Shown one piece after another: positions 4,494-31,542 of a DNA stretch of 64,000 nt. The DNA lies in IMG/VR virus record IMGVR_UViG_3300042302_000394, positions 143,814 through 207,813 of that record; one strand, written 5' to 3'. The notes beneath the pieces are model-generated. The model had not been told where the DNA came from and did no database searches. It was given only the letters and a program-made list of their open reading frames with translations. A program made the position numbers and the translations under genes. Positions within the stretch are counted from its first letter, which is position 1. The number at the start of each line of letters is the position of its first letter.

Positions 4494-4527
4494 TTTACAC
4501 AGCGTAACAAGATCTATATAATAAATA
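4494..4527 (+). promoter_or_regulatory. Overlapping sigma70-type and late-type promoter
   Basis: TTTACA-17nt-TATAAT, with TAAATA overlapping the -10 box (TATAATAAATA). Confidence 0.6.
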
Positions 4528-4578: not shown

Positions 4579-4833
4579 ATGTTTTCAGCATTTGCACCAT
4601 ACTTTACGCTCGAGGCACAGATCGATGCGTTTCAAACTACCAAGCGTGGTTTAACAGATAAGATCATCACTGATCCTACATTGAACAAAGCGGCACACCA
4701 ATACATCGATGCTCAGACTACATTTGCCAAGATGTTGTCTAAGAACTTCGCTGATCTTGCCAAGTATTCCGTGGATTCTTTTGCCAACAAGGCATTTCCA
4801 CAGACTAAAGAAAAAGCCACTACTAAGGCTTAA
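4579..4833 (+). CDS. Phasin-like amphipathic helical protein
   Basis: 84 aa, AAGGAG RBS, Ala/Thr/Lys-rich helical pattern (IDAFQTTK...YIDAQTTFAK) recalling phasins. Confidence 0.45.
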   Translation: MFSAFAPYFTLEAQIDAFQTTKRGLTDKIITDPTLNKAAHQYIDAQTTFAKMLSKNFADLAKYSVDSFANKAFPQTKEKATTKA

Positions 4834-4855
4834 TACACACATACAGGAAAAAAAT

Positions 4856-5125
4856 ATGACAGACTTTAATACACCAAAGCTACCAGAAGTTAAATTTAAT
4901 AAGAACGGCTACGAAATCCGTACAGACATTCTAGGCATGGCAAAAAGCCTAGTACAAGAAGATTTCCATGCTAAATTTCAAGGCTGGGAAATGACTGCTA
5001 CTCGTGACGAGAAGACTGGTCAGATCGTCAGTACTGTTGCAATGCCGACTTTTCCAGGACTAGACAAAGTTCTTGAAACAGCAGAAAAAATGTACGCATT
5101 TGTCAACGCTGGCGCCAAGAAATAA
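4856..5125 (+). CDS. Conserved phage hypothetical protein, called gene X here (89 aa)
   Basis: AGGA RBS, ATG at 4856: [26 protein letters not shown]...; second copy at 9225-9485. Confidence 0.8.
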   Translation: MTDFNTPKLPEVKFNKNGYEIRTDILGMAKSLVQEDFHAKFQGWEMTATRDEKTGQIVSTVAMPTFPGLDKVLETAEKMYAFVNAGAKK

Positions 5126-5173
5126 TTTATAATAATATTAGGGCATAGCCCATAAAATAATATACTAGAAAAT

Positions 5174-5200
5174 AAAAAAGGACCTTCGGGTCCTTTTTTT
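5174..5200. terminator. Bidirectional terminator with UUCG loop
   Basis: AAAAAAGGACC-TTCG-GGTCCTTTTTTT between convergent genes. Confidence 0.9.
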
Positions 5201-5603
5201 ATAGTGGCTTGCTTCTTAGATAGTTAGGATATCGTTTATTGAAGTTACGCATAATAACTCCTGCTATCTCATGTGCTTGATTTTCATGCGGACTACCTGT
5301 TTCACCACTAGTATCCGTTAGCTCACCTTGCTGATCTTGTTTGTAATGAACCAGCTCGTGTGCCACTGTTCTCAGTATGTCAACAGGGTGACGGTTCTTT
5401 AAGGCAACTAACAGCATATTCTCACTCGGCACGTATGCACCAAAGCTGGGCTGCTCGCCTGTATTTAGATCCGGGGCAAACTGCATCTTAGGCAACTGAT
5501 CTATTTCAAGGATCTCCATAGCTAGAGGTAGAAACTTTTGAAACATTTCCACAACGTTGGCATTTTCCTCTGCGCCTTCAACAATAAACTGACGTGCTCT
5601 CAT
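5199..5603 (-). CDS. Zincin-like metallopeptidase (HExxH)
   Basis: RTVAHELVH followed by E..A.E (PHENQAHE); N-terminus MRARQFIVE. Confidence 0.7.
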   Translation of the reverse strand: MRARQFIVEGAEENANVVEMFQKFLPLAMEILEIDQLPKMQFAPDLNTGEQPSFGAYVPSENMLLVALKNRHPVDILRTVAHELVHYKQDQQGELTDTSGETGSPHENQAHEIAGVIMRNFNKRYPNYLRSKPL

Positions 5604-5611
5604 AGCAGTAT

Positions 5612-8600
5612 TTAGCGCCGAACAAAATGATAATCACCGTCGGGTCCGTTGTTGCTAAAGATACCCAAACAGTCGAACCCTTGTGTGTCCATATATGCTA
5701 TTACATCATCTTTTAACGGGGCACCTTTATTGTATTCTACAACCTGTAGTTCTAGAATAACATGTTTCACTGTGGATAATGTTTCTACAGCACCCTTTAG
5801 CACATCTAACTCTGCACCTTGTACATCCATTTTAATCATATCTGGGGGAGGAAAGTTTTTAAGGCGGCGTACAGCATCTAGGGTCACTGTCTTTAGCCTA
5901 CGACGATGTGTTTCGTTAAAGTAGTTGACTGTTTCGGGATTTACTTCTTCGTTTTCTTTGTAATAACTGTTGCCACCCGGATGTACATCATTTTGATAGA
6001 AGTCAACTTCTTTGCCACTCTGGTCACTTAGCACACCCATATGATATTGCAAATTACGTTCTTTATATAGGAACTCGCTACTGTCCATTGCTTCAAATAC
6101 AACATACTTTGCTCGATCCCAAATACGTTGTGCTTCGTTAGTCCAGTGCAGAACACATGCACCGATATCGTATATAACCTTTGGTTCAAACCCTTCATTC
6201 TTGAGTTTGGCAAGATAATCTACATGGTTACGAGGAATCAGTCGTTGACTTCCTAACTCCCGTAAACGATCCTGTATGTTAAACGGTGTTACATCTGGGG
6301 CAGCAGTAATGGCATTATCTACATTAAAAGTAAAGCTGCCAGTATGGCTGCATAACACACTGGGATCTGCCCAAATTTTAAATCCTTTGTCCCGGGCCTT
6401 GCGACAGAAATCTACATCTTCTGAAACAGTGTTCCTATGATCGATAGCACTATAATACTTAAATTGTGGATAACCTATTTCACACATAACTTCTGCTTTG
6501 ACTAGAGCACAACCAAATCCACAGCCGGCAATTTCAACTAAAGGTCTACCCTTTAGCTTTTCATACGGCATATTGCTTACTCCGCCATTCTGATTGTGTT
6601 CATATATTTCTAAAATATGTAATCCAGGTTTACGTTGTATGTATAAACCGCTGACAACATCCTTATCGTGCGATAGCAACTTTGACAGTGTGTTAGGAGG
6701 GAAGCTAATATCACTATCTACACTGAATAGATAATCAAATCCTTTTACTACCCAGTCGGCAATCAAGTTGCGTACCTGATCAATATTGTATCCGTAAAAA
6801 TATTGGAACGTTGCTTCGTAGCCCTCGGGGATGATTAAGTCATAGATACTTTTAAAAGTTTCCGGTTCAATATTACGAGCTGTTGGAATTGCTATGAGAA
6901 TCTTTTTTTTAGATGGATTCATTTTTTTAATAATAGATTTAGCTGCTACGTTTTGTTCAATAGCATTTACTTTGTAATCGTTGAGTGGATTAACATCATT
7001 GTAATTATATACAATATCTTGTAGACATTTAACTTTACTAGGATCAGCATTTTCGATTAGTGCATAGAAAATACTGCCGTCACCGCCTGCCTTATACCAT
7101 GCACCTGTGTCATCTTGGAATAGGCTATCGTCTAGACCGTCAATTAACTGTTGTTTAAATGTGCGTAGGTGTGTGTAAGGTAAGATCCAATTAAAGTGAT
7201 GATTCCTGTATTCTTTGCTGTTCTTTACGTGCTCGGGATAAGGCTGACTAATCAATGGAATATTATCAACCATTGACCAGCAACTACCGTAGGTAAATTC
7301 TGTTGTGCCGTCATACACATTGTTATAGTAGCTGAACACAGTGTTGTCATTAACTAGACTGTCGTCACCGTCGAGTATCATTACAATAGCATTGGGATCT
7401 TGTAGACTTCTAAATGTATCTATTTGATTTTTTACTGCGCCTACGTTATTTTGATTTTCAATAACTTCAAACTTGGCTCGAATGTGTGCAGGATAGGCTG
7501 ACAGTGCAGTGTACAATGCTTCCAGTGTATTATCAGTACTTGCATCGTCTACCAAAATACATCGATAGTTGTCGTAGTCTTGTGTAGCAATACTGTTGAT
7601 GCAACGTGCAATATAATTTTTGCAATTGTAGAATGTGCTAACAACCACAATAGGTTGCTCTGTTCCCGGCTTGTAATCTTCTAATTCAACTGTATTATGA
7701 AACTTGCGATTGTAAATCTTGTGCAGTCTGTGGTTGATTTTGCTAACAGCACGATAGTCACTGCTGCTTAGATAATGTCCTGTCTTTTTATAAAAATGCT
7801 GCTTCCATTGCAGTGCTACACTGTCCCAACCCGCAATGTCTTTAACAATGTTGCAATAGTATTGTTTCTGTTGATGTAGATACGGATTACGATATGCTTC
7901 TACCGTGGTCTTGACAAACTGTTCAACCTGTGTTGGTACACTGATATCCGGAAACAGTCCATTGGGTTCAATAGCATAGTCAATTAAGTAACAAGCACCT
8001 GCCACTGCAATTTCTTCTAATGCACCAAAGCGGCAAGTTATGATAGGAGTGTTGTAGCATAAACTCTCCATTGATGAAATGCCGTAGGTTTCCGGAAACG
8101 CTGCCGGATACAGCATGAAGTTAGCAGTAGTTAGTATATCGGCAATTTCTTTCTGCGGTATAACACCTGTAAATTCTATACCTTGTGCTGCTAGCTGCGG
8201 ATCAGCAGCCATCTCGCGCCAATCTTTTTCTTGTTGATCAGGTTCTGCATTTGTGCTAAATCTATAGTAGCCGCCTATGACTTTTAGTTTAGCTTCAGGT
8301 ATATGTCGCTTGACATGTGGCCAGATCATTTTAACCAGCGGAATCATTCCTTTGGTCACTGATGCATTATAAACAAACAAATTCTTATCTTTGGCTTTGA
8401 TATCCACTTCGCGATTATAGATGCGTACACCGTTACGTGTGATGAACATCTTACGCTTTAGTACTTCGAAGTTTCGTCTGCGGCCATGATGACAGTTAGT
8501 AACATAGGTTAGGTGGAAATCGCTTAGTGTAAAGATGTCTGTAATTCTATCTGCAACAGCAAGCTCTTCGATCAAGTTATCGCCTAGACAGAATGTGTCG

Positions 8601-8980
8601 TGCATCCACAATACTCGCATTTTAGCTTTACTGATAATCCTGTCGTATAGATTCATAGACATGAATGGTACACTGCGATTATCGTTTAATCTCGGATAAT
8701 CTTTCGGATCAGTGAATGGAATAATTGTGCGACTGCTTATAACAATATCAAACTCGTGATTGTTAGCTAGATCTGTAAGTGGCCTATAAGTTACTGTGTC
8801 GTACTTGCCAGGTACTGCATGATCAATGTTACAGTTATTGAACACTGTAACATCAAATCCAATTTGTGCGAGTTCCCTACTCATTAGGATAACAGCACTT
8901 TCGCTGCCTCCTAGTCCTTGTTTGAATACCGTAGTTCCGTCGTATGGGATGCCGATAATATCTATAATAGCTAGCTTCAT
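5612..8980 (-). CDS. Four-domain enzyme: GT4-like (GT-B), GT2, second GT-A domain and FkbM-family methyltransferase
   Basis: GLGGSE and PETYGISSMES (GT4); VVVSTFYN...LVDDASTD...LDGDD (GT2); IAIPT...VDSD...GCGFGC (GT-A); YDIGAC and IKMDVQGAE (FkbM). Confidence 0.9.
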   Translation of the reverse strand: MKLAIIDIIGIPYDGTTVFKQGLGGSESAVILMSRELAQIGFDVTVFNNCNIDHAVPGKYDTVTYRPLTDLANNHEFDIVISSRTIIPFTDPKDYPRLNDNRSVPFMSMNLYDRIISKAKMRVLWMHDTFCLGDNLIEELAVADRITDIFTLSDFHLTYVTNCHHGRRRNFEVLKRKMFITRNGVRIYNREVDIKAKDKNLFVYNASVTKGMIPLVKMIWPHVKRHIPEAKLKVIGGYYRFSTNAEPDQQEKDWREMAADPQLAAQGIEFTGVIPQKEIADILTTANFMLYPAAFPETYGISSMESLCYNTPIITCRFGALEEIAVAGACYLIDYAIEPNGLFPDISVPTQVEQFVKTTVEAYRNPYLHQQKQYYCNIVKDIAGWDSVALQWKQHFYKKTGHYLSSSDYRAVSKINHRLHKIYNRKFHNTVELEDYKPGTEQPIVVVSTFYNCKNYIARCINSIATQDYDNYRCILVDDASTDNTLEALYTALSAYPAHIRAKFEVIENQNNVGAVKNQIDTFRSLQDPNAIVMILDGDDSLVNDNTVFSYYNNVYDGTTEFTYGSCWSMVDNIPLISQPYPEHVKNSKEYRNHHFNWILPYTHLRTFKQQLIDGLDDSLFQDDTGAWYKAGGDGSIFYALIENADPSKVKCLQDIVYNYNDVNPLNDYKVNAIEQNVAAKSIIKKMNPSKKKILIAIPTARNIEPETFKSIYDLIIPEGYEATFQYFYGYNIDQVRNLIADWVVKGFDYLFSVDSDISFPPNTLSKLLSHDKDVVSGLYIQRKPGLHILEIYEHNQNGGVSNMPYEKLKGRPLVEIAGCGFGCALVKAEVMCEIGYPQFKYYSAIDHRNTVSEDVDFCRKARDKGFKIWADPSVLCSHTGSFTFNVDNAITAAPDVTPFNIQDRLRELGSQRLIPRNHVDYLAKLKNEGFEPKVIYDIGACVLHWTNEAQRIWDRAKYVVFEAMDSSEFLYKERNLQYHMGVLSDQSGKEVDFYQNDVHPGGNSYYKENEEVNPETVNYFNETHRRRLKTVTLDAVRRLKNFPPPDMIKMDVQGAELDVLKGAVETLSTVKHVILELQVVEYNKGAPLKDDVIAYMDTQGFDCLGIFSNNGPDGDYHFVRR

Positions 8981-9102
8981 GCTATTAATTATACAGTATA
9001 TCTTAGTAGGGTCAATGATATTGATTTTTACTCATTGATCGGATAATGCTCGTGAAATTAATCTTTTAATAATCTAGGTAAGACTCTGTCAGTGCTGTAA
9101 AG

Positions 9103-9237
9103 TTAAGAAGTTTGGAAAGGACCTGCAGGTGCCGTGAAGTTAGCAGTGTAACGTGCTACACCATTGGTAATTCTGAAGTCACTAATGTATCCGTTCAAAT
9201 AATCACCAGCCTGGCCTCCAAAGTTTTGAAACCCCAA
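9103..9237 (-). pseudogene. Orphaned C-terminal remnant of a LamG tail-fibre gene
   Basis: Reads [43 protein letters not shown], paralogous to the end of 9578-14158 ([30 protein letters not shown]). In-frame stop at 9250-9252; no ATG or RBS. Confidence 0.85.
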
Positions 9238-9485
9238 AATTGCCAGAAGTTAAATTCAACAAAAACGGATACGAAATCCGTACAGATATCCTAGATATGG
9301 CAAAGGGACTAGTAAGCGAAGAATTTCATTCCAAATTTCAAGGTTGGGAAATGACTGCTACTCGTGACGAGAAGACTGGTCAGATCGTTACCAAAGTTGG
9401 TATGCCAGAGTTTCCAGGACTTGAAAAAGTTCTTGAGACAGCGGAAAAAATGTATAGTTTTGTCAATGCTGGTGCTAAGAAATAA
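9225..9485 (+). pseudogene. 5'-truncated second allele of gene X
   Basis: [27 protein letters not shown]...VNAGAKK*. Lacks the first codons and RBS, with an in-frame stop at 9183. The 3' UTR and terminator are also duplicated. Confidence 0.8.
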
Positions 9486-9537
9486 TTTTATAATAATAAT
9501 ATTAGGGCATAGCCCAAACATAATATAGTAAGTAATG

Positions 9538-9561
9538 AAAAAGGACCCGAAGGTCCTTTTT
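9538..9561. terminator. Bidirectional terminator
   Basis: AAAAAGGACC-CGAA-GGTCCTTTTT; same hairpin as 5174-5200 with the loop in the opposite orientation. Confidence 0.9.
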
Positions 9562-9577
9562 CTATAGTATTTCGCTG

Positions 9578-12500
9578 TTACTGAGTCAGGGAAACACCTG
9601 TAGGTGGTGTAAAGTTAGCAGTGTAACGGGCAATACCTAGGGTGATTCTAAAGTCACTAATATAACCATTGACACTATGAGCAGCACTAAAGCTACTGCC
9701 ACCTATATATATAAGACCGGTAGCAGATGCAAAATTAGTTGAATTAGAAGTAGTGGAGCCAACTTGTGTTCCGTTAACAAATAATCTCAGTGATGTGCCT
9801 GATCTGGTAGCTGCTATATGAGTCCAAGTATTTGCTACTACTGCTGTGGTCGTCACATTTAATATAACCGCGTTTCTTGCGTCAAGCTTCAGTTGGGTGG
9901 TGCTCCAATCGTAACCAAATGACACTACCGATCCTCCATCGTCAGGTCGTAAAAACGAAGAAAATGTACTAGTGTTTGCCATGTTTACCCAAAGTTCTAT
10001 AGTAAAGTCGCCTGTACCAAAATTTATAGAGGCACCGCCTATATAAGTCAAACTATCCCCATTACCGTCAAACTTCACGCTTTCTGTGCCGGTGAATTTA
10101 ACTACTGTGGTGTCAATTTTAGCATCACCCACAGTTTCATAATTGTTCATTCCCGAACTGTCATAGACACCAGCACCGGTTCCGTTGATCAATAATACAG
10201 TGTTTCTAACTGCTGTTAATGGTGTGTTTTGTGGTACGAAATTTGAGGTGTAGAGTGCGGTACCTTTGACATATCTAAAATCGCTGATGTAACCAGTAAC
10301 ACCTACTGGGTTAAAAGCAGTCCAATTGGTTGAATTAACGCCTAACCATAATCCGTTAGGTCCAGCTAAATCATATCGACTACTCAATGGTTGTGCTGCA
10401 CCAGGTGCGCTGACCGCTGTTCCTCCTACTCCATTTACATACACTTTAATAAAATTACTCGAACGAACTAGCGCAATGTGGTTCCAGCTATTAGTTGATA
10501 AAGTAGCCGACGACGGAAATAGCGCGGTATATTGTACAGAGCTCGTATTACTGCCGCCGCTGATAAAGATACTTGCGCTTTTGTTAGTAATCCAAATAAC
10601 CCGCTCACTGTTATATGCTTCTTTGTAAGTGCCGTAGTTTGCTATTGTGTAATCTGCCAAACCGCTAGTTGAGTAAACCCATAACTCCATAGTGAAGTCT
10701 TGACCGGAAGCAAAATTCATTACGGATGTGGTATTGGTCTGAGCAGAACCAATCCAATCATTGGTACCATCAAAGCGTGAACTACCGCCAAACACTTGTG
10801 GTGTATAACGTTGTCTAGTAGTGTAAGCGACGTTGAATGGTGCGAATTGGGATGGTATCGTGTTACCAACCGCAGTTATTGCAAAATTGTTTGTACTGTT
10901 ATCTATGAAAGTATTAGATTGGCAAGTCAATAAACTTGTACCTGCGATAGCAGTTAGTGGTTCAGTAGGTACTGTTATCGTAGTAGATGTAGCAGCGTAG
11001 GGAGCAGAACCAGTAGCACCATTATAAATCCTAACGTTACTAATATACCCCACATGGCCTCCGCCCCCAGCAATGATGCCAAAACCAATATATAAAGCAC
11101 TGGCACTGGTTTTTGCAGCAGTGTTCAATCCGTTGAAAGATGTTGCCCTAGTGCCATTGATGAACAAAGCCCAGTCTGCATTTGTTTTGACCAATGCCAA
11201 GTGATACCACTGACCTGCAACAGGAACGGTACTAGAAGGAAGAACGCCGATCCCCGAGCTGCCAGGTGCACCAGAAGCTCCCCAATTTATAGCAATTTGA
11301 CTAGATGCATTTAAATATATTGCCCAGTTTGAAAAAGAGACAGTATCTAATCCGCCGTTGTCAATGATAGTTCGGTTGGCACTAACAGTAGCAAAGTTTA
11401 CCCAAAGCTCGCAACTAAAAGAATCTGTGCTACCCGAAGTGATATTAAATGCAGCATTTGATGGTACAGTTAAATAATCCCCAGTACCATCAAAGTAGTT
11501 GCTATAATAAGGTGTAGGTAATGAGGTTTCTGTAAAAGGACTGAACTTTTGCACACTGACATCACCCGCCTTGGTGACGGCAAAGTTGTTGGGGCTGGCA
11601 TCGACGAGTCGATTGCGAGCACAGGTCAACAAACTTGTTCCAGCTATGGGTTGCAGTGGGGCGGTGCTTGGTGTAAAGTTAGCGGTATAAAGTGCGGTGC
11701 CTTTGACTAACCTTAAATTACTAATATAACCGGTAACATATTCAGATGTTCCGTCTGAATATGCTCCAACAGTCACTTGGCTTGCACCGTCGGTTAGTGC
11801 TCCTATTGTGCCGGTAGTTGCATCTAATACTCCGTTCACAAACAATCTAACAGTACTGCTGGATCGTGTAATTGCAACGTGATTCCATTGGTTGATGACT
11901 ACCGCAGTGGTAGTTCCTGTTACATTGGTAGCAGCCCCTGAAAATTGTAGTCGACCAGCAGCAACATATCTAAAGATCCATGCATTACCGGTACCCCATT
12001 GTGCCAATATATTATTATTTCCTGAAGTAATAGAAGTTGGATACACCCAGCATTCAAAAGTAAAGTCATTAGTGCCCAATGTGAACGCAGCGTTGTCCGG
12101 AATACTTAAATAATCGCCAGTACCATCAAAGTAGTTGCTCCATCCACCACCGTAGGGACTGAATGTTCCTTGTGTAGTATTACCATTTCTTGTTATCAAG
12201 AAATTGTTAGTGCTGTTGTCAATGAACACATTGTTGTTGACTGGTTGATTGGTTTGGCAAGTCAATAAACTTGTACCTGCGATAGCAGTTAGTGGTTCAG
12301 TAGGTACAGTTAATGTAGTTTGTGTCGGATCGTAAACTGCTGTACCTATAACAACTCTAAAATTACTAATATAACCAAAAAACATCTGTGAAGCTGCACC
12401 GCCTATAGTTGCTGGTCCTGCTACATAATTTGTGCTGACTGTACCATTGACATTACGAACACCGTTAAAAAATATACTTGTTTGGTTTGCACCTGTTCCA

Positions 12501-14158
12501 CTTCTTACAGCCACAATATGTAACCATCTATTTGTAACAAACGGACTTCCCGATGTTGCTATAGTATTGCCTACGCCGTATGTACCAATATTTAAATTTC
12601 CACCGCTATCTGTTTGTAATTGTATACCTCCGTTTGTAGTGGTACCAAATATAATAGCGTTTGTTGGTATTGATGTAGGATAAGCCCAAAACTCTATAGT
12701 AAAGGCACTAGTTCCGAGCGTCATTGATTGTGCCGTTAAAAAGTCCCCAGTACCATCAAAGTAAGTACTGCCGTATCCACTATAACTAGTATTGGGTACA
12801 AACGGATCAAACCCTGATATAGCCAAATTTCCATTTACTGTTAGTGCAAAATTGTTTGTACTGTTATCAATAAATCTATTGCTCTGACAAGTTAATAAAG
12901 TAGTACCTGCAATAGCAGTTAGTGGTACCGTAGGCGGTGTAAAGTTAGCTGTATAAACAGCAGAACCTTTGACTATTCTTACATTAGAAATATATCCGTT
13001 GAAGTCCCATCCACTGCCTGCATCTGGATTTCTACCAATGTAAAATGTACTTGCATTATCGGAGCCCGGGACAAGTGCGCCAGTAGCTGTTTGCGCTACA
13101 CCGTTTAAGTACAGTATATTTGTTGTTCCGTCGTAACACATGGCAACATGATTCCACTGGTTCAAAGGAGCAGTATTGTTTGATAGTTGACTACTGCCAG
13201 TATTAAATAACCAAGTCACTTGTTGAGATGTGTTTACATCAAGTCGCCATCTTGCGGCGCCTGATGAAATTAATTGAACTTGTTTTGAGCTTGTTTGATA
13301 AAACCAACATTCAACAGTCCACGACCCGGAGCTTAGGTTAAATGCTACATTTCCCGGATTAGATATAAAATCACCAGTACCATCAAAGAAATTACTGTAA
13401 TATCCAGGTGTATATGGACCGAAGTTATTTGGTCTAGTATCGCCAAATATAGATACTGGGAAGTTGTTTGTACTTGCATCGTCGACAAATACACTAGTTG
13501 CAGGGGAATTTGCACTAATCAATGTAGTGACATTTTTAAAGAAAGGGTCAGCGATCGTTATAGTAACAGTAAAGGCTCTGGGGCTTTCTTGTAATTCCAC
13601 ATCAATTGCTTCTATAGTAAAATTATAAAGTGTTTCAACACCCACTGCAACTAATCCAGTAATTAATCCACTGCTGGACAATGAAACACCGCTCGGTAAA
13701 CTACTACCGGCTTGAACCGCATATGTTAGTGGTGAATCTCCGGTTGTTTCTAGTTGTATAGAGATGGCAGTATTTGCCGGTTGATCGGGCAATGTACTAC
13801 CTGTTACCCAAGTAGGGTTTCCACTATAGGTTAACCCATTAACTCGTATTGCGACTCCACCATCGGGATTGACTACATACACTACATATGTACCCGCAAC
13901 CTGTGCAGGAACCTGTACATTTAGGGTAGTACTATTTACAAATGTAACTGATGTTGCGTTTGCACTGCCTAAAATAACTTGACATCCTGAAACAAACTTA
14001 GTTCCTGTGAGTTTTATGTAACCACCGGATAGTAATACAGCGGTATCATCAATAATAGCATAACTGGCATCTGTTATTTGTACGTTGGTTAACGTAGGGC
14101 CGCCCAACGCGGCTAATGTTGCAGGTTGTATGTTGTCTTGACTAATTTGAGTAGGCAT
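9578..14158 (-). CDS. Tail fibre/adhesin with IPT/TIG and Ig-like N-terminus and multiple LamG (ConA-like) domains
   Basis: About six repeats of YFDGTGD...FT.E.W...W.H.A..R...GYISN.R...YTANFTP. Confidence 0.85.
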   Translation of the reverse strand: MPTQISQDNIQPATLAALGGPTLTNVQITDASYAIIDDTAVLLSGGYIKLTGTKFVSGCQVILGSANATSVTFVNSTTLNVQVPAQVAGTYVVYVVNPDGGVAIRVNGLTYSGNPTWVTGSTLPDQPANTAISIQLETTGDSPLTYAVQAGSSLPSGVSLSSSGLITGLVAVGVETLYNFTIEAIDVELQESPRAFTVTITIADPFFKNVTTLISANSPATSVFVDDASTNNFPVSIFGDTRPNNFGPYTPGYYSNFFDGTGDFISNPGNVAFNLSSGSWTVECWFYQTSSKQVQLISSGAARWRLDVNTSQQVTWLFNTGSSQLSNNTAPLNQWNHVAMCYDGTTNILYLNGVAQTATGALVPGSDNASTFYIGRNPDAGSGWDFNGYISNVRIVKGSAVYTANFTPPTVPLTAIAGTTLLTCQSNRFIDNSTNNFALTVNGNLAISGFDPFVPNTSYSGYGSTYFDGTGDFLTAQSMTLGTSAFTIEFWAYPTSIPTNAIIFGTTTNGGIQLQTDSGGNLNIGTYGVGNTIATSGSPFVTNRWLHIVAVRSGTGANQTSIFFNGVRNVNGTVSTNYVAGPATIGGAASQMFFGYISNFRVVIGTAVYDPTQTTLTVPTEPLTAIAGTSLLTCQTNQPVNNNVFIDNSTNNFLITRNGNTTQGTFSPYGGGWSNYFDGTGDYLSIPDNAAFTLGTNDFTFECWVYPTSITSGNNNILAQWGTGNAWIFRYVAAGRLQFSGAATNVTGTTTAVVINQWNHVAITRSSSTVRLFVNGVLDATTGTIGALTDGASQVTVGAYSDGTSEYVTGYISNLRLVKGTALYTANFTPSTAPLQPIAGTSLLTCARNRLVDASPNNFAVTKAGDVSVQKFSPFTETSLPTPYYSNYFDGTGDYLTVPSNAAFNITSGSTDSFSCELWVNFATVSANRTIIDNGGLDTVSFSNWAIYLNASSQIAINWGASGAPGSSGIGVLPSSTVPVAGQWYHLALVKTNADWALFINGTRATSFNGLNTAAKTSASALYIGFGIIAGGGGHVGYISNVRIYNGATGSAPYAATSTTITVPTEPLTAIAGTSLLTCQSNTFIDNSTNNFAITAVGNTIPSQFAPFNVAYTTRQRYTPQVFGGSSRFDGTNDWIGSAQTNTTSVMNFASGQDFTMELWVYSTSGLADYTIANYGTYKEAYNSERVIWITNKSASIFISGGSNTSSVQYTALFPSSATLSTNSWNHIALVRSSNFIKVYVNGVGGTAVSAPGAAQPLSSRYDLAGPNGLWLGVNSTNWTAFNPVGVTGYISDFRYVKGTALYTSNFVPQNTPLTAVRNTVLLINGTGAGVYDSSGMNNYETVGDAKIDTTVVKFTGTESVKFDGNGDSLTYIGGASINFGTGDFTIELWVNMANTSTFSSFLRPDDGGSVVSFGYDWSTTQLKLDARNAVILNVTTTAVVANTWTHIAATRSGTSLRLFVNGTQVGSTTSNSTNFASATGLIYIGGSSFSAAHSVNGYISDFRITLGIARYTANFTPPTGVSLTQ

Positions 14159-14160
14159 AG

Positions 14161-14508
14161 TTATACTATTGTTATTCCATTCGGTTTTACTGCAACTTTT
14201 CCATTGTCAGTGGTTGTGACATAAACAATGTAATTTCCCACAGCTAGTGCAGGTACTTGAATATTTATTCTAACAGAGCTTACAAATGTAACTGTGCTGG
14301 CCAGTGCTGTACCTATCACAACATTGATGTTACTTGAAAAATTAGATCCGTTGATGATTGCAAACCCACCTGTTGTGCCTATTGTGGTTCCGCCTGTTGC
14401 AATATAAGAACCATTAGCAACCTGCACGCTGGTAATTTTAGGGCCAGATATATATATAATATCCAATGTACTGGGCTGAATATTGTTCGATGATATTTGA
14501 GTAGTCAT
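14161..14508 (-). CDS. IPT/TIG-domain virion protein, paralogous to the N-terminus of the LamG protein
   Basis: MTTQISSNNIQPSTL...VTFVSS...VPAL compared with MPTQISQDNIQPATL...VTFVNS...VPAQ. Confidence 0.7.
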   Translation of the reverse strand: MTTQISSNNIQPSTLDIIYISGPKITSVQVANGSYIATGGTTIGTTGGFAIINGSNFSSNINVVIGTALASTVTFVSSVRINIQVPALAVGNYIVYVTTTDNGKVAVKPNGITIV

Positions 14509-14918: not shown

Positions 14919-15857
14919 TTAAAATGTAATAGAGCCTGAGCCAATGAAGGAGTAGATTCTAAAACCGTTCAATAATGTAATAGTTGGACCACCAGTAGTA
15001 GATGTGGCCGCCGGGTACGCACTTGAGTATCTAAGTACCACAACTCCGGACGAACCGGCGGTACCTGTCGAACCTGTGCCACCACCACCACCGCCACCAC
15101 CCGTGTTTGCATCGCCAGCAACTGGTCTATTACCTGCGGCGGTTGGAGCGCCTTGGCCACCTGGTGAATAAGTTACAGCAGAGCCCCTAATACCATTAGA
15201 TAACCCTGCACCTCCGGCGGCCAGCACTATACCAGCACCGTTTGCGCCCACGCCGCCAGCTCCACCACCACCTGCGCCGCCGCCGCCGCTGGTGCCAGTT
15301 TCTGCTGTAGATCCACCGTTTCTACCGTAAACTCCGCCTGCACCAGCAGCGCCACTGGAGTTGGCGCCACCGCCTCCAGACCCATTTCCGGAACTATTTC
15401 CGGCACGAGTTGCAGCATAACTAGAGCCAGTACCACCGGCAGTTCCACCAAAACCTCCTCCATTGGCTGTGACAGAATACGCAACTGCTCCTGCTGTTGT
15501 AATACTGCTATTACCTCCGTTGGTTTGAGTTCTACTGGCCACGCCTCCAATTGTGCCGCCGCCGCCTACTGTGATGATATAGGTTTGGCCAATCTCAAAA
15601 TTCTGAGAAGACAATGTTAAGTATGCGCCGCCGCCGCCACCTCCGCCGCCACGTGCATTATTTGCTCCGGCACCGCCCGCTCCACCCCCTCCGACTATAA
15701 GTATATCATCAACAGGTATACGAAACAGCGGCGGCCAGGTATTAGTTTGTCTAGCCTGCATTTGCTGAGTAACATTAAAAACTCCATTTATCGCCGCTAC
15801 TGCGCTAATAGTTGGGGGTGTAGCCGATATTATTCCGCCAAGGTACCGTTTTACCAT
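14919..15857 (-). CDS. Glycine-rich domain tail-fibre protein
   Basis: LIVGGGGAGG...GGGGG...GSSGVVVLRY...YSFIGSGSITF. Confidence 0.8.
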   Translation of the reverse strand: MVKRYLGGIISATPPTISAVAAINGVFNVTQQMQARQTNTWPPLFRIPVDDILIVGGGGAGGAGANNARGGGGGGGGAYLTLSSQNFEIGQTYIITVGGGGTIGGVASRTQTNGGNSSITTAGAVAYSVTANGGGFGGTAGGTGSSYAATRAGNSSGNGSGGGGANSSGAAGAGGVYGRNGGSTAETGTSGGGGAGGGGAGGVGANGAGIVLAAGGAGLSNGIRGSAVTYSPGGQGAPTAAGNRPVAGDANTGGGGGGGGTGSTGTAGSSGVVVLRYSSAYPAATSTTGGPTITLLNGFRIYSFIGSGSITF

Positions 15858-29381: not shown

Positions 29382-29822
29382 TTAGTTACACCAACTTTGT
29401 TTAGCATCGCCGTAATATTCGCGTGCTAGACCGTTGGCAATTAATCCTTGACGAATGCTCTGTCCATTGACTAAGATGTCTCCTAGAATGCGACCGCCAA
29501 ACTTGTCCCAACCGTAGATGATAACTTGATGTTTAGGGTGGGATTGAATCGCATGTGTGGTAAATTTGCTGGCCACTAATGCTCTCTCGTTTTCTTGCGG
29601 GCACTGTGCTCTGTGTCCTTTTTCCGGAGTATCAACACCAAATATACGAACTGCTAGTTCTGGCTTTAGTGGAGCAGGAAGGAATGGTGCTGCAATCACA
29701 ATAGTGTCACCGTCGCTTACACGTATAATCTGTGCGTCATAAGTTGCACCTTTAGGTGTCTTTTGTGCTAGAGCAGGAACTGCCGCCACTGCTAATAATA
29801 GGGTTAATAATAGTTTTTTCAT
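29382..29822 (-). CDS. Thermonuclease (SNase-like) with signal peptide
   Basis: MKKLLLTLLLAVAAVPALA signal; DGDT, RIFGVDTPE, DKFGGRILG motifs; start moved to ATG 29822. Confidence 0.9.
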   Translation of the reverse strand: MKKLLLTLLLAVAAVPALAQKTPKGATYDAQIIRVSDGDTIVIAAPFLPAPLKPELAVRIFGVDTPEKGHRAQCPQENERALVASKFTTHAIQSHPKHQVIIYGWDKFGGRILGDILVNGQSIRQGLIANGLAREYYGDAKQSWCN

Positions 29823-29829
29823 AATGTAT

Positions 29830-31542
29830 TTAAGTAATTTCTTGCCAGCCAATTTGTGCCAGCACGTCTGCGTTGTTTGATGTTGCTGCCATAGTTAGTG
29901 TCACAATATCGCTGACTCCTGCCAATGTTCTGCCTAACTGAAACGCAAACGCATCTGCTCCTAGTTCCGATAGTTCTCTACTGCTGACATAACCAGTTTG
30001 TAGTTCTATACCGCCCGAAACTCCTGTGGCGGCCGTGTCATATTCAACAGTTCCTGAAGTACTGGTTCCTGCCCAAGTAGCACCAGTTAGGGTAGGGTTT
30101 AGCACCAATCTCCAACGATAGTAATTCACTGTGGGACTCAGCACATCCACTTGTCTGGGCAACACAATAGCATCTAATCTTGTGCTGGCCAATCTAATGC
30201 TGACCAACGGATAGTATGTTCCGGCATTGACCAATCTCAACACACTGGTGCCACGTCCTGCTGATTCGCTGTAGGTAAATGCGTTGTAGCCACCTTCGCT
30301 GATTACAGTGGAGCATATCTGTCTCATCATACTGGATGAAGCAGTGGCTCCAGTATTGGTTATTTCATAACGCACTGGCAGTACAGCCGTGGTCATATAA
30401 GTGGTGGTATTATTCACAACATTGGCATGATGGAATGTGTGGCAAAGCACATAAGCACCGTTGACAACAAATCCACAGCGAACACTTCCCACGCCCAACC
30501 ACTCAATGTCTGTCCAAAATATCTGTGTCCTGTCTACATTTAATGCGGCGAATGGATTGTCCCAAGCGTCTTGTCTTATCCTATCTTCAACCAACGCACC
30601 TGTACTATAACTTCTTATTACCAAATAGTTATATGCGCCATCATTTTCAAAATAGACTCCGTTGTTGGTGGTAAAATATCCCACACGCTGACGCAGGTTG
30701 GCCTTGGGAGTGTTCATGGCAAAAGTGGCCAACACCAGCAGACTCTTGCCTGGCTGATAAGGAAAAACTCTTTTGGTTTCTCGTATGACACTGGATCCAT
30801 TACTTGTGCTCACTGCCAGTCTAAATGTAGAACTGTCTGTTTCGTAGACCACTGTGCCGCCAGTGCTGGTGCTACTGCTAAAATCATTGTGGTCGTAATA
30901 TCTTGCTCTACTGTCAAACAGTGTATAAGGCTCACTGACTCGCAGTCTACCAAACGCATCAGTAGATCCTGTGCCCAATGTAAATGTGTTAGTGCCAGTT
31001 AGTGTGGCAGTTACCGTACCACTGACGGGTATAGGATTACCTGAATCGTTTTTAATCTCTACTTCCGGAAGGCTTGAGATAGCAACTGTGCCAGTTATAG
31101 TCCACGGTATTGTACCTTGGTATACTGTGGAGGTGGTTGGAAAGTTAGTTACAGCAAAACTGGTGTTGCTGATTGTCAGTGTATTGCTTACAAATACAGT
31201 TGAAGTAAAATTACTTACTGTGACTGTTCCTGTGATAGCAGGTAGAGAAGAAATATTTACAGTTGATGTAAAATTGCTGACTACAACTTGTCCGTTGGTT
31301 CCTATGCTAACTGTCCAGGTGCCTTCTTGACGAACACTAATGCTTTCTAATGCAGCCAGTGTTGATGTACTTAAACTTACAGTGTCAACAATAACATCAC
31401 CTTCAAGATTGATACCATCAACATGTACACGAGCCACGGGTTGCCCCTGGCTGTTGTACTGCATAGTCTTATGAATATTTAGAAGATTGCTCTCCTGTGG
31501 ATGTTCATAGGCTGTGCTGTTCTGATAGCGATCAACCGCCAT
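29830..31542 (-). CDS. Virion structural protein
   Basis: S/T-rich VSNF repeats then a DAFGRLRVSEPYTLFD...YQPGKS...EWLGVG domain typical of phage virion proteins. Confidence 0.7.
   Translation of the reverse strand: MAVDRYQNSTAYEHPQESNLLNIHKTMQYNSQGQPVARVHVDGINLEGDVIVDTVSLSTSTLAALESISVRQEGTWTVSIGTNGQVVVSNFTSTVNISSLPAITGTVTVSNFTSTVFVSNTLTISNTSFAVTNFPTTSTVYQGTIPWTITGTVAISSLPEVEIKNDSGNPIPVSGTVTATLTGTNTFTLGTGSTDAFGRLRVSEPYTLFDSRARYYDHNDFSSSTSTGGTVVYETDSSTFRLAVSTSNGSSVIRETKRVFPYQPGKSLLVLATFAMNTPKANLRQRVGYFTTNNGVYFENDGAYNYLVIRSYSTGALVEDRIRQDAWDNPFAALNVDRTQIFWTDIEWLGVGSVRCGFVVNGAYVLCHTFHHANVVNNTTTYMTTAVLPVRYEITNTGATASSSMMRQICSTVISEGGYNAFTYSESAGRGTSVLRLVNAGTYYPLVSIRLASTRLDAIVLPRQVDVLSPTVNYYRWRLVLNPTLTGATWAGTSTSGTVEYDTAATGVSGGIELQTGYVSSRELSELGADAFAFQLGRTLAGVSDIVTLTMAATSNNADVLAQIGWQEIT

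What the first reader, a model, noticed from the sequence alone, without database searches (positions are those of the whole stretch)
9103..9700. Visible scar of a receptor-binding tip swap with a microhomology junction
Seen: a 44-codon orphan C-terminus of a LamG fibre (minus strand, 9103-9237) is fused back-to-back to a decapitated gene X. The bases TTTGAAACCC (9225-9234) read as part of G-F-Q-N in the LamG remnant and as F-E-T-P in gene X, so they fit both parents. Many differences between the paired copies are synonymous, as expected for diverged functional alleles. Inference: DNA from a related phage in which the LamG gene abuts gene X entered by homologous recombination inside the LamG gene and by microhomology at the other end, replacing the fibre tip and stranding the old one.
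Basis: partly seen in the sequence, partly recalled or inferred. Interest (0 to 1): 0.65.

Follow-up and report, generated by a model that had tools for sequence, protein, structure and literature searches.

The report
Recombination scar beside a phage fibre gene
A freshwater giant phage carries, between a glycosyltransferase gene and a large LamG-repeat fibre gene, the stranded last 40 codons of another fibre gene joined head-to-head to a start-less second copy of a conserved small gene: a real, fixed footprint of illegitimate recombination between related phages, of a kind already known in principle.

Summary
Window 9103-9225 (-) is the end of a terminal LamG domain. Window 9225-9485 (+) is a second copy of gene X without start codon, ribosome site or promoter. 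The joint is not an assembly artefact. Seven metagenome contigs are identical over 10.2 kb, 22 lake or freshwater runs hold the stretch, and error-free contigs from two runs bridge 9225.

Corrections:
- X is 89 aa (4856-5125), not 138, so X' lacks only Met plus three codons.
- X' is foreign. Its coding part is 98% identical to the X of another phage lineage (L088), with 6 synonymous and 0 non-synonymous changes. It is 82% identical to the resident X.
- X' is itself chimeric: its last codons, 3'UTR and terminator are of the type found beside p134/GT in close relatives.

The whole fibre gene is collinear with orthologues (L351, L352) that have the same tip. In L351 that tip sits directly next to GT. 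Nothing shows a crossover inside the fibre gene. An arrangement with X next to a LamG gene was not found in more than 150 loci.

The ten "shared" bases are identical to the X parent. The LamG parent is unknown, so microhomology has only weak indirect support.

This is ordinary phage mosaicism, neatly preserved.

The parts
4494..4522 (+). Sigma-70-like promoter (TTTACA, 17 nt, TATAAT) of the W-X operon, followed by a conserved 5'UTR. This is the signal set that X' lacks.
   Evidence: scores it 11 of 12. It is conserved directly upstream of X in L088, L107, L021 and L044.
4579..4833 (+). W, an 84-aa ORF inserted between the X promoter/5'UTR and X in this lineage only.
   Evidence: it is absent in L088 and L021. 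It has no Pfam or PHROG hit.
4856..5125 (+). Resident, complete gene X (89 aa, [13 protein letters not shown]...).
   Evidence: More than 590 IMG/VR loci and more than 4500 proteins are homologous.
5174..5199 (.). Bidirectional intrinsic terminator between X and p134. The UUCG loop is on the X strand.
5199..5603 (-). p134, a 134-aa cargo gene convergent with X.
   Evidence: It is 81-83% aa identical in L021, L024, L053 and L133.
5612..8980 (-). 1122-aa fusion of two glycosyltransferase domains and an FkbM methyltransferase domain ('GT').
   Evidence: Pfam domains GT1, GT2 and Methyltransf_21. It is 78-91% aa identical in relatives.
8988..9015 (-). Promoter-like site of GT (TTGACC, 16 nt, TATAAT). 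Homology with relatives ends at 9023.
9024..9102 (.). 79-nt spacer found only in this lineage, presumably the 3' flank of the former fibre gene. It has no hairpin.
9103..9225 (-). Stranded 3' end of a former LamG fibre gene: stop codon plus 40 codons, [40 protein letters not shown].
9225..9240 (.). Joint zone. It is 100% identical to L088-type X. On the other strand it reads I-L-G-F-Q-(N), which fits the 'viG' strand of the LamG-tip profile. A short shared homology is possible here.
9225..9485 (+). X': gene X from codon 5 of the L088-type allele to the stop. It has no ATG, no ribosome site and no promoter. 9225-9470 is L088-like at 98%. From about 9471 it is the p134/GT-clade type.
9486..9568 (+). 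3'UTR of X', 91% identical to that of L053, L024 and L044, where it abuts p134.
9537..9562 (.). Bidirectional intrinsic terminator that now ends the fibre transcript. Its loop is flipped, so UUCG lies on the fibre strand.
9578..14158 (-). 1526-aa fibre-like virion protein with six Laminin_G_3 domains. Its terminal domain is the present 'tip'.
   Evidence: Orthologues are P0004 in L351 and P0024 in L352.

Best explanation
The joint at 9224/9225 is the footprint of one illegitimate, non-allelic recombination between two related freshwater phages. It happened inside a hypervariable island that all relatives carry between the conserved gene X and a conserved SNase-like nuclease gene.

- Parent G1 had X, terminator, p134, GT, then a LamG fibre with the old tip.
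- Parent G2 had an L088-type X and a terminator followed directly by the present fibre block.
- The 3' part of G1's fibre gene, about 40 codons before its stop, was joined to the 5' end of G2's X at codon 5. A few shared bases may have helped.
- The product kept G1's left side (complete X, p134, GT, old tip end) and G2's right side (start-less X', its terminator, and the whole present fibre with its downstream genes).

The two stubs are inert by-products. X' has no promoter, ribosome site or start codon. The remnant has no upstream part. The bidirectional terminator that came with X' now ends the fibre transcript.

Which parent counts as 'recipient' cannot be told. The same structure can be read as replacement of a fibre gene or as acquisition of the X-p134-GT cassette.

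Shown: the two fragments, their foreign origin, the reality and fixation of the joint, the variable island, and the whole-gene collinearity of the fibre with orthologues.

Inferred: a single event, the existence of G2, the role of short homology, and the inertness of the stubs.
For: - The fragments and their homologies are established.
- X' is a xenologue. It is 98% nt identical to L088 X over 246 nt, with 6 synonymous and 0 non-synonymous changes. Against the resident X, dS is 0.9.
- Identity with L088 begins exactly at 9225, after ATG TCA ACA AAA.
- The joint is real and fixed.
- Island structure. Relatives run p3727m, X, variable cargo, SNase homologue, with cargo from nothing (L118) to more than 30 kb. 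p134, GT and fibre blocks are each optional.
- The gene next to GT differs in every relative and always ends 2-5 nt beyond the GT -35 box.
- The fibre belongs as a whole to one lineage. Both ends are 84-91% aa identical to L351 and L352, which have the same tip type. Downstream genes are collinear at 77-88% nt.
- No promoter lies before X'. The only RNA contig over X' carries the L088 allele and its own 3' end, so it comes from another phage.
- The terminators are strong hairpins on both strands.
- Neither stub has a frameshift or stop, which suits a recent event.
Against: - A G2-type arrangement, with X and terminator directly followed by a LamG fibre, was never observed.
- The 3'UTR and terminator of X' are of the type that abuts p134 in GT-bearing relatives. 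G2 may therefore have had p134-GT, and a second event, a deletion, would then be needed.
- L351 has GT directly next to the same fibre type. One could read 9024-9577 as a composite insertion into such an ancestor.
- No intact copy of the old tip exists in the collections searched.
- All copies are clonal, so selection on the stubs cannot be measured.
Confidence: 0.6

Rival explanations
1. Only the receptor-binding tip was exchanged. Donor DNA (X, terminator, new tip) entered by homologous recombination inside the LamG gene and by a 10-nt microhomology at the other end.
For: The remnant and the present tip share 80% nt over 75 nt, which could serve homeologous recombination. Phage recombinases tolerate 22% divergence (PMC2327257). 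The antisense of the X-derived bases 9225-9240 reads ILGFQ, in the register where LamG tips have 'viG'. The chance of this is about 3%.
Against: No breakpoint is visible inside the fibre. The N-terminal 200 aa and the terminal domain are equally close (84-91%) to L351 and L352, which have the same tip. Upstream of NGY the remnant is unrelated to the present tip. No shaft with the old tip, and no donor arrangement, was found. The ten bases are fully explained by the X parent.
Confidence: 0.12
2. Two steps. An illegitimate join between two GT-bearing genomes first gave a hybrid with two p134-GT copies. A later deletion removed the second copy, from just after the X' terminator to just before the fibre stop.
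For: The 3'UTR and terminator of X' are 91% identical to those that abut p134 in L053, L024 and L044. The closest fibre orthologue (L351) has GT next to the fibre. 'CTATAG' after the hairpin could be the last codon and stop of a p134 gene.
Against: Direct repeats of 3.8 kb would be expected to recombine and erase the scar itself. The deletion end points would have to be very neat. It needs one more event.
Confidence: 0.15
3. In-situ tandem duplication of the X-to-fibre-end segment within one genome, followed by deletion and divergence of the copies.
For: The architecture is X ... tip end | X' ... tip end, which is formally that of a tandem duplication joint.
Against: X' is 98% identical to a foreign allele and dS is 0.9 to the resident X. 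The remnant's loop region is unrelated to the present tip, which is the ancestral type shared with L351 and L352.
Confidence: 0.03
4. A functional element: a diversity-generating-retroelement template repeat, a silent tip cassette for programmed switching, or an expressed small gene.
For: A non-coding copy of the 3' end of a receptor-binding-type gene lies 350 bp downstream of it in the same orientation, as in retroelement systems. Both stubs are free of stops.
Against: Mismatches are not adenine-specific: 7 of 25 in the remnant and 5 of 25 in the tip. There is no reverse transcriptase in the 207-kb record, which is 58% complete. The copies are direct, not inverted, so there is no invertible segment. 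The remnant occurs only in this clone. There is no promoter and no specific RNA.
Confidence: 0.03
5. Assembly artefact: a chimeric join at a repeat shared by co-occurring phages.
For: X is a conserved repeat in these communities. Logan contigs break at 9257 and 9374, and other X alleles are present in the same runs.
Against: Identical joints occur in seven independently assembled contigs, and 22 runs hold the stretch. Contigs bridge 9225 by 32 to 149 nt on the X' side and more than 1200 nt on the other side, without mismatch.
Confidence: 0.01

Closest known systems
Mosaic phage genomes made by illegitimate and homeologous recombination (Hendrix-type model; Martinsohn, Radman and Petit 2008, PMC2327257; De Paepe et al. 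2014, PMC3945230)
   Same: There is an abrupt joint between segments of different ancestry and no signal at the border. Truncated genes are left at the joint. Diverged homologous flanks (X alleles, LamG ends) are of the kind phage recombinases can use.
   Different: Both by-products are still intact and readable, and a near-identical allele of one parent (L088-type X) is on record. The event lies in a lytic-looking giant freshwater phage rather than in lambdoid or temperate phages.
Modular exchange of tail-fibre and tailspike genes among T4-related and other phages (PMC2993671; PMC10408124)
   Same: The gene beside GT is replaced in every relative at one fixed boundary, and LamG-repeat virion proteins carry variable parts.
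   Different: The terminal domain is the conserved part among the three orthologues, while the internal LamG cores vary. This particular joint was non-allelic, fibre gene to gene X, not an allelic cassette swap.
Diversity-generating retroelements and invertible tip cassettes (Bordetella phage BPP-1 Mtd; Mu/P1 G and C segments), recalled from general knowledge
   Same: A second partial copy of the 3' end of a receptor-binding-type gene lies close to the gene.
   Different: There is no adenine-specific mismatch pattern, no reverse transcriptase was found, the copies are direct, and no invertase sites are seen.

Membership tests
Terminal Laminin_G_3 (concanavalin A-like) domain of phage virion proteins, for the remnant | Sequence match to the last beta-strands: hhG, loop, NGYI.D.RIT.G.ARYT.NFT.P, then a stop within about 10 residues. 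| tested here: met
   A profile of 86 terminal LamG ends gives 59 bits, E 5e-20. tblastn gives 57-77% identity to many tips.
Terminal Laminin_G_3 (concanavalin A-like) domain of phage virion proteins, for the remnant | Match to the curated Pfam model PF13385. | tested here: inconclusive
   The 40-46 aa piece gives no Pfam hit. Neither does the equally short end of the intact fibre. The full fibre hits at 1.8e-105.
Gene X family (unnamed conserved phage protein), for X' | Full-length collinear homology to X alleles. | tested here: met
   86 of 89-92 codons are present. Identity is 98% nt to L088 and 99% aa to P0122.
Gene X family (unnamed conserved phage protein), for X' | Own start codon, AGGAG ribosome site and conserved promoter/5'UTR. 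| tested here: not met
   The first in-frame start is TTG 9240, without a ribosome site.
Illegitimate-recombination scar | Two truncated genes of different ancestry abut, each with intact homologues elsewhere. | tested here: met
Illegitimate-recombination scar | Both parental arrangements are on record. | tested here: inconclusive
   GT next to a LamG fibre is seen in L044 and L351. X next to a LamG fibre was never seen. The collections were only sampled: the best 80 of more than 599 hits per scan.
Illegitimate-recombination scar | Microhomology shared by both parents at the joint. | tested here: inconclusive
   The X parent has the bases. The LamG parent was not found. The indirect register argument gives a chance of about 0.03 and is post hoc.
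Intrinsic (Rho-independent) bidirectional terminator | A G+C-rich hairpin flanked by an A-run and a T-run, stable on both strands. | tested here: met
   -19.9 and -17.1 kcal/mol, z about -5.5.
Diversity-generating retroelement | Template/variable repeat pair differing at adenines, and a reverse transcriptase nearby. | tested here: not met

The most novel reading that the evidence does not exclude
The scar may be more than debris. X and X' are 345-bp direct repeats at 82% identity that bracket the p134-GT cassette. Homeologous recombination between them would excise the cassette and the remnant exactly. It would regenerate an 'X, terminator, fibre' genome, which is the missing parent type. The same repeats would let the cassette move into any relative that carries X. 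On this reading the structure marks a portable, reversible glycosyltransferase module in a widespread lake phage. The captured terminator, whose loop is flipped so that UUCG lies on the fibre mRNA, would be kept because the fibre gene needs it.
Probability: 0.15. Interest if true: 0.45.

Novelty: new member of a known kind. Interest (0 to 1): 0.3.

Why it matters
Joints of illegitimate recombination are assumed to underlie phage mosaicism. They are seldom caught with both by-products intact and one parental allele identifiable.

This example gives a concrete, dated-by-sequence case in an abundant uncultured freshwater phage. It maps a hypervariable island between gene X and an SNase-like gene, where glycosyltransferase and fibre modules come and go. 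It also shows that in this fibre family the internal LamG cores vary, not the terminal domain.

It does not reveal a new mechanism.

Tried and rejected
- Megablast and tblastn against GenBank phages found nothing.
- Degenerate patterns for the old tip ([13 protein letters not shown] and FGGQAGDY) hit only the six scar-bearing contigs in IMG/VR and nothing in JGI metagenome contigs.
- A search for the present tip in metagenome contigs gave at best a 69% identical internal domain of an unrelated phage.
- The 3'UTR motif scan found no X next to a LamG gene.
- The fibre N-terminus has no close kin in IMG/VR apart from its own clone.
- The fibre block has no nucleotide match in five large relatives.
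- The contexts of tips at 61-74% identity are unrelated phages without X.
- Pfam is blind to such short pieces.
- The L351 intergenic region is not homologous to the window's spacer.
- The composition profile shows no boundary at the joint.
- The RNA runs gave no evidence for X' expression. The one contig over X' belongs to an L088-type phage.
- The retroelement, tandem-duplication and assembly-artefact readings were rejected, as set out under rival explanations.
- The protein atlas gave only 'hypothetical protein, viral' for X.
Full report
**Context.** The window is the last 64 kb of a 207,813-bp IMG/VR virus record, linear and estimated 58% complete. The runs that hold it are lake-water and freshwater metagenomes. 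The region around the finding belongs to a cluster of tail-fibre-like genes. These are the 1526-aa protein with six Laminin_G_3 domains at 9578-14158 (-), and further fibre-like proteins of 747, 1540 and 899 aa.

**Anatomy, left to right.**
- A sigma-70-like promoter at 4494-4522, with a conserved 5'UTR.
- An 84-aa ORF, W, at 4579-4833.
- Gene X at 4856-5125 (89 aa).
- A bidirectional terminator at 5174-5199.
- p134 at 5199-5603 (-).
- A 1122-aa protein with two glycosyltransferase domains and an FkbM methyltransferase domain ('GT') at 5612-8980 (-).
- The GT promoter at 8988-9015 (-).
- A 79-nt spacer at 9024-9102.
- The LamG remnant at 9103-9225 (-).
- X' at 9225-9485 (+).
- The X' 3'UTR and a second bidirectional terminator at 9537-9562.
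- Nine bases, then the stop codon of the fibre gene at 9578.

The 138-aa ORF 4709-5125 in the mechanical ORF list is an artefact. Its first 49 codons run through the 3' end of W in another frame. All homologues begin near MTDF, MSTKF or MSNF, behind an AGGAG site.

**Check of the observation.** Both homologies are real. Window 9225-9568 matches 4865-5205 at 82% over 345 bp (E 5e-94). Window 9121-9195 matches 9596-9670 at 80% over 75 bp (E 1.7e-13). The remnant ends like a terminal LamG domain, not an internal one. A profile of 86 terminal LamG ends from other phages matches it at 59 bits, E 5e-20. The substitution patterns are those of coding sequences:

| Pair | dS | dN |
|---|---|---|
| X versus X' | 0.91 | 0.10 |
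| Remnant versus tip (31 codons) | 0.80 | 0.22 |

The joint is not an artefact. The same 10.2 kb occurs without a single difference in seven IMG/VR contigs from different metagenomes. Twenty-two DNA runs from about 21 studies hold 98% of the sampled words. Contigs from two runs cross 9225 without mismatch. The correction is that X' is missing only the start codon and three codons, plus every expression signal.

**Origin of X'.** X is an extremely conserved, virus-only small protein of unknown function. It has more than 590 loci in IMG/VR and more than 4500 proteins at E below 1e-30. It always lies just right of the p3727m homologue.

X' is not a diverged in-situ copy of the resident X. Its coding part, 9225-9470, is 98% identical to the X of contig 3300043438_000807 (L088), and the next best match is 86.5%. 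It differs from L088 by 6 synonymous and 0 non-synonymous changes, while both are at dS about 0.9 from the resident X.

Identity with L088 starts exactly at 9225, after ATG TCA ACA AAA.

From about 9471 onwards X' changes type. The last codons (AKK*), the 3'UTR and the terminator are 91% identical to those of L053, L024 and L044, and unlike L088. X alleles are thus themselves mosaic. P0126 is a natural chimera of the two types.

The absence of non-synonymous change and of any frameshift means one of two things. Either X' was decapitated recently relative to a dS of 0.12, or it is still under selection. X' has no promoter, ribosome site or ATG. The only RNA contig over it carries the L088 letters and the L088 3' end, so it comes from another phage. 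Recency is therefore the better reading.

**The surroundings in relatives.** Across about 150 loci the backbone is p3727m, X, terminator, variable cargo, an SNase-like nuclease (homologue of window 29382-29852), then homologues of 29830 and 31838.
- Cargo ranges from nothing (L118), through a fatty-acid desaturase (most loci, including L088 and all 13 contigs of the X'-type allele), to p134 with or without GT, to more than 30 kb with fibre genes (L021).
- In the GT-bearing relatives, the gene upstream of GT differs each time. It has a LamG end in L044, ...SAYWF* in L021, L024 and L028, a Gly-rich protein in L054, and another in L020.
- In each case that gene stops 2-5 nt beyond the -35 box of the GT promoter, which corresponds to window 9023.

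This is a recurrent exchange boundary.

**The fibre itself.** The word search of the large protein collection found two orthologues: P0004 (1497 aa, contig Ga0620604_000142, L351) and P0024 (1550 aa, L352).
- L351 has GT (88% aa identity over its 452 visible residues), a 57-nt unrelated intergenic stretch, then the fibre with the same tip type as the window (92% aa in the terminal domain).
- This is followed by collinear orthologues of the downstream genes at 77-88% nt. There is no remnant and no X'.
- Along the fibre, the first 200 and last 200 residues are 84-91% identical in all three proteins. The middle alternates between about 25-30% and about 60-70% per 100 residues, even between L351 and L352.

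Two consequences follow:
1. The present tip is an old, shared feature of this fibre lineage. It was not newly grafted onto a resident shaft, and there is no sign of a crossover inside the gene.
2. If any part of this protein is the fast-changing specificity determinant, it is the internal LamG cores rather than the terminal domain.

That the protein binds a receptor at all is inference from family annotation.

**Most likely history.** A single non-allelic, illegitimate join between two related genomes accounts for everything with the fewest steps. G1 had X, terminator, p134, GT, spacer, then a fibre with the old tip. G2 had an L088-type X and terminator followed directly by the present fibre block. 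The join is G1 up to 40 codons before the stop of its fibre gene, then G2 from codon 5 of X onwards.

Whether one calls this 'the fibre gene was replaced' or 'the X-p134-GT cassette was acquired' is a matter of viewpoint. The data do not fix the second crossover. Orthology to L021 and L054 at nucleotide level resumes only near window 19,780.

There are three weak points:
- G2's arrangement has not been observed.
- X' carries a terminator type that elsewhere abuts p134, so a prior or later deletion of p134-GT may be needed (rival 2).
- L351 shows GT next to this fibre type, which allows a reading as a composite insertion.

**Microhomology.** They need no second parent. Demonstrable LamG homology reaches N-F-G-G, with the N codon at 9223-9225. 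So the two homologies abut with at most one base of proven overlap.

There is an indirect hint of more. The antisense of the X-derived bases 9229-9240 reads I-L-G-F. This sits where the tip profile has 'v-i-G', with an acceptable loop length of 12 residues (observed range 3-18, mode 9-11). A hydrophobic-hydrophobic-Gly triplet at any of the six acceptable positions is expected by chance in about 3% of cases. The argument is post hoc. An alternative register, with N-F-G as the strand as in L186, is also possible. The claim is therefore plausible but unproven. Only an intact copy of the old tip can decide it, and none is in IMG/VR or the JGI contigs searched.

**Rivals rejected.**
- In-situ duplication is contradicted by the allele affinities.
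- A retroelement template is contradicted by the mismatch spectrum and by the absence of a reverse transcriptase in the available 58% of the genome.
- An invertible cassette is excluded by the direct orientation of the copies.
- An assembly artefact is excluded by the independent assemblies.

**Comparison with what is known.** This is phage mosaicism by illegitimate recombination, possibly helped by very short homology. That mechanism has been discussed for lambdoid and other phages (PMC2327257, PMC3945230, PMC2993671). It is a new, unusually legible instance rather than a new kind of thing.

The most novel reading not excluded concerns the X/X' direct repeats. They may make the p134-GT cassette excisable and portable, and the captured terminator may have been co-opted by the fibre gene. 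Its loop is flipped relative to all relatives, so that UUCG lies on the fibre mRNA. I give this reading 0.15.

Noticed in passing
window 5175-5198 and 9538-9561: The two terminator hairpins are exact reverse complements of each other. In all relatives the loop reads TTCG on the X strand. In the X' copy it is flipped to CGAA, so the stable UUCG tetraloop lies on the fibre mRNA. This is either a small hairpin inversion or four substitutions.
   Followed up: partly
window 4579-4833 (+): An 84-aa ORF (W) sits between the conserved X promoter/5'UTR and X, with the ribosome-site context repeated on both sides. It is absent in L088 and L021 and has no family match. This is a small gene insertion at the 5' end of X. 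The listed ORF 4709-5125 is an artefact of it.
   Followed up: partly
window 4856-5125; loci L005-L137: Gene X is a virus-only protein of about 90 aa. It stays 80-93% identical among phages whose neighbouring genes are only 45-50% identical. It has a strong conserved promoter and marks the left edge of a hypervariable island that ends at an SNase-like gene (window 29382-29852). Its alleles are mosaic (P0126) and its function is unknown.
   Followed up: partly
window 9578-14158 versus L351:10001-14494 and L352:617-5269: In three orthologous fibre proteins both ends are 84-100% identical. The middle alternates between about 25-30% and about 60-70% identity per 100 residues. This suggests the cores of the internal LamG domains are exchanged or diversified while the linkers are kept.
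   Followed up: partly
window 8981-9023 and L044, L021, L024, L054, L020: Five different genes end 2-5 nt beyond the -35 box of the conserved GT promoter in relatives. This is a fixed boundary for cassette exchange.
   Followed up: yes
window 15000-15800: G+C rises to 58-61%, against about 40% elsewhere, inside the 312-aa Gly-rich-domain gene (14919-15857).
   Followed up: no
window 14161-14508 and 13800-14158: The 115-aa protein with an IPT/TIG-like domain is 44% identical to the N-terminal part of the fibre protein encoded next to it. This looks like a local duplication of the N-terminal domain.
   Followed up: no
run X24, over window 9355-9475: A freshwater metatranscriptome holds a contig of the L088-type X allele with its own 3' end. 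The intact gene of the X' donor lineage appears in RNA libraries from lakes.
   Followed up: partly
L088:8314-9057 and most X loci: In most relatives the first cargo gene after X is a fatty-acid desaturase (PF00487), an auxiliary metabolic gene.
   Followed up: no
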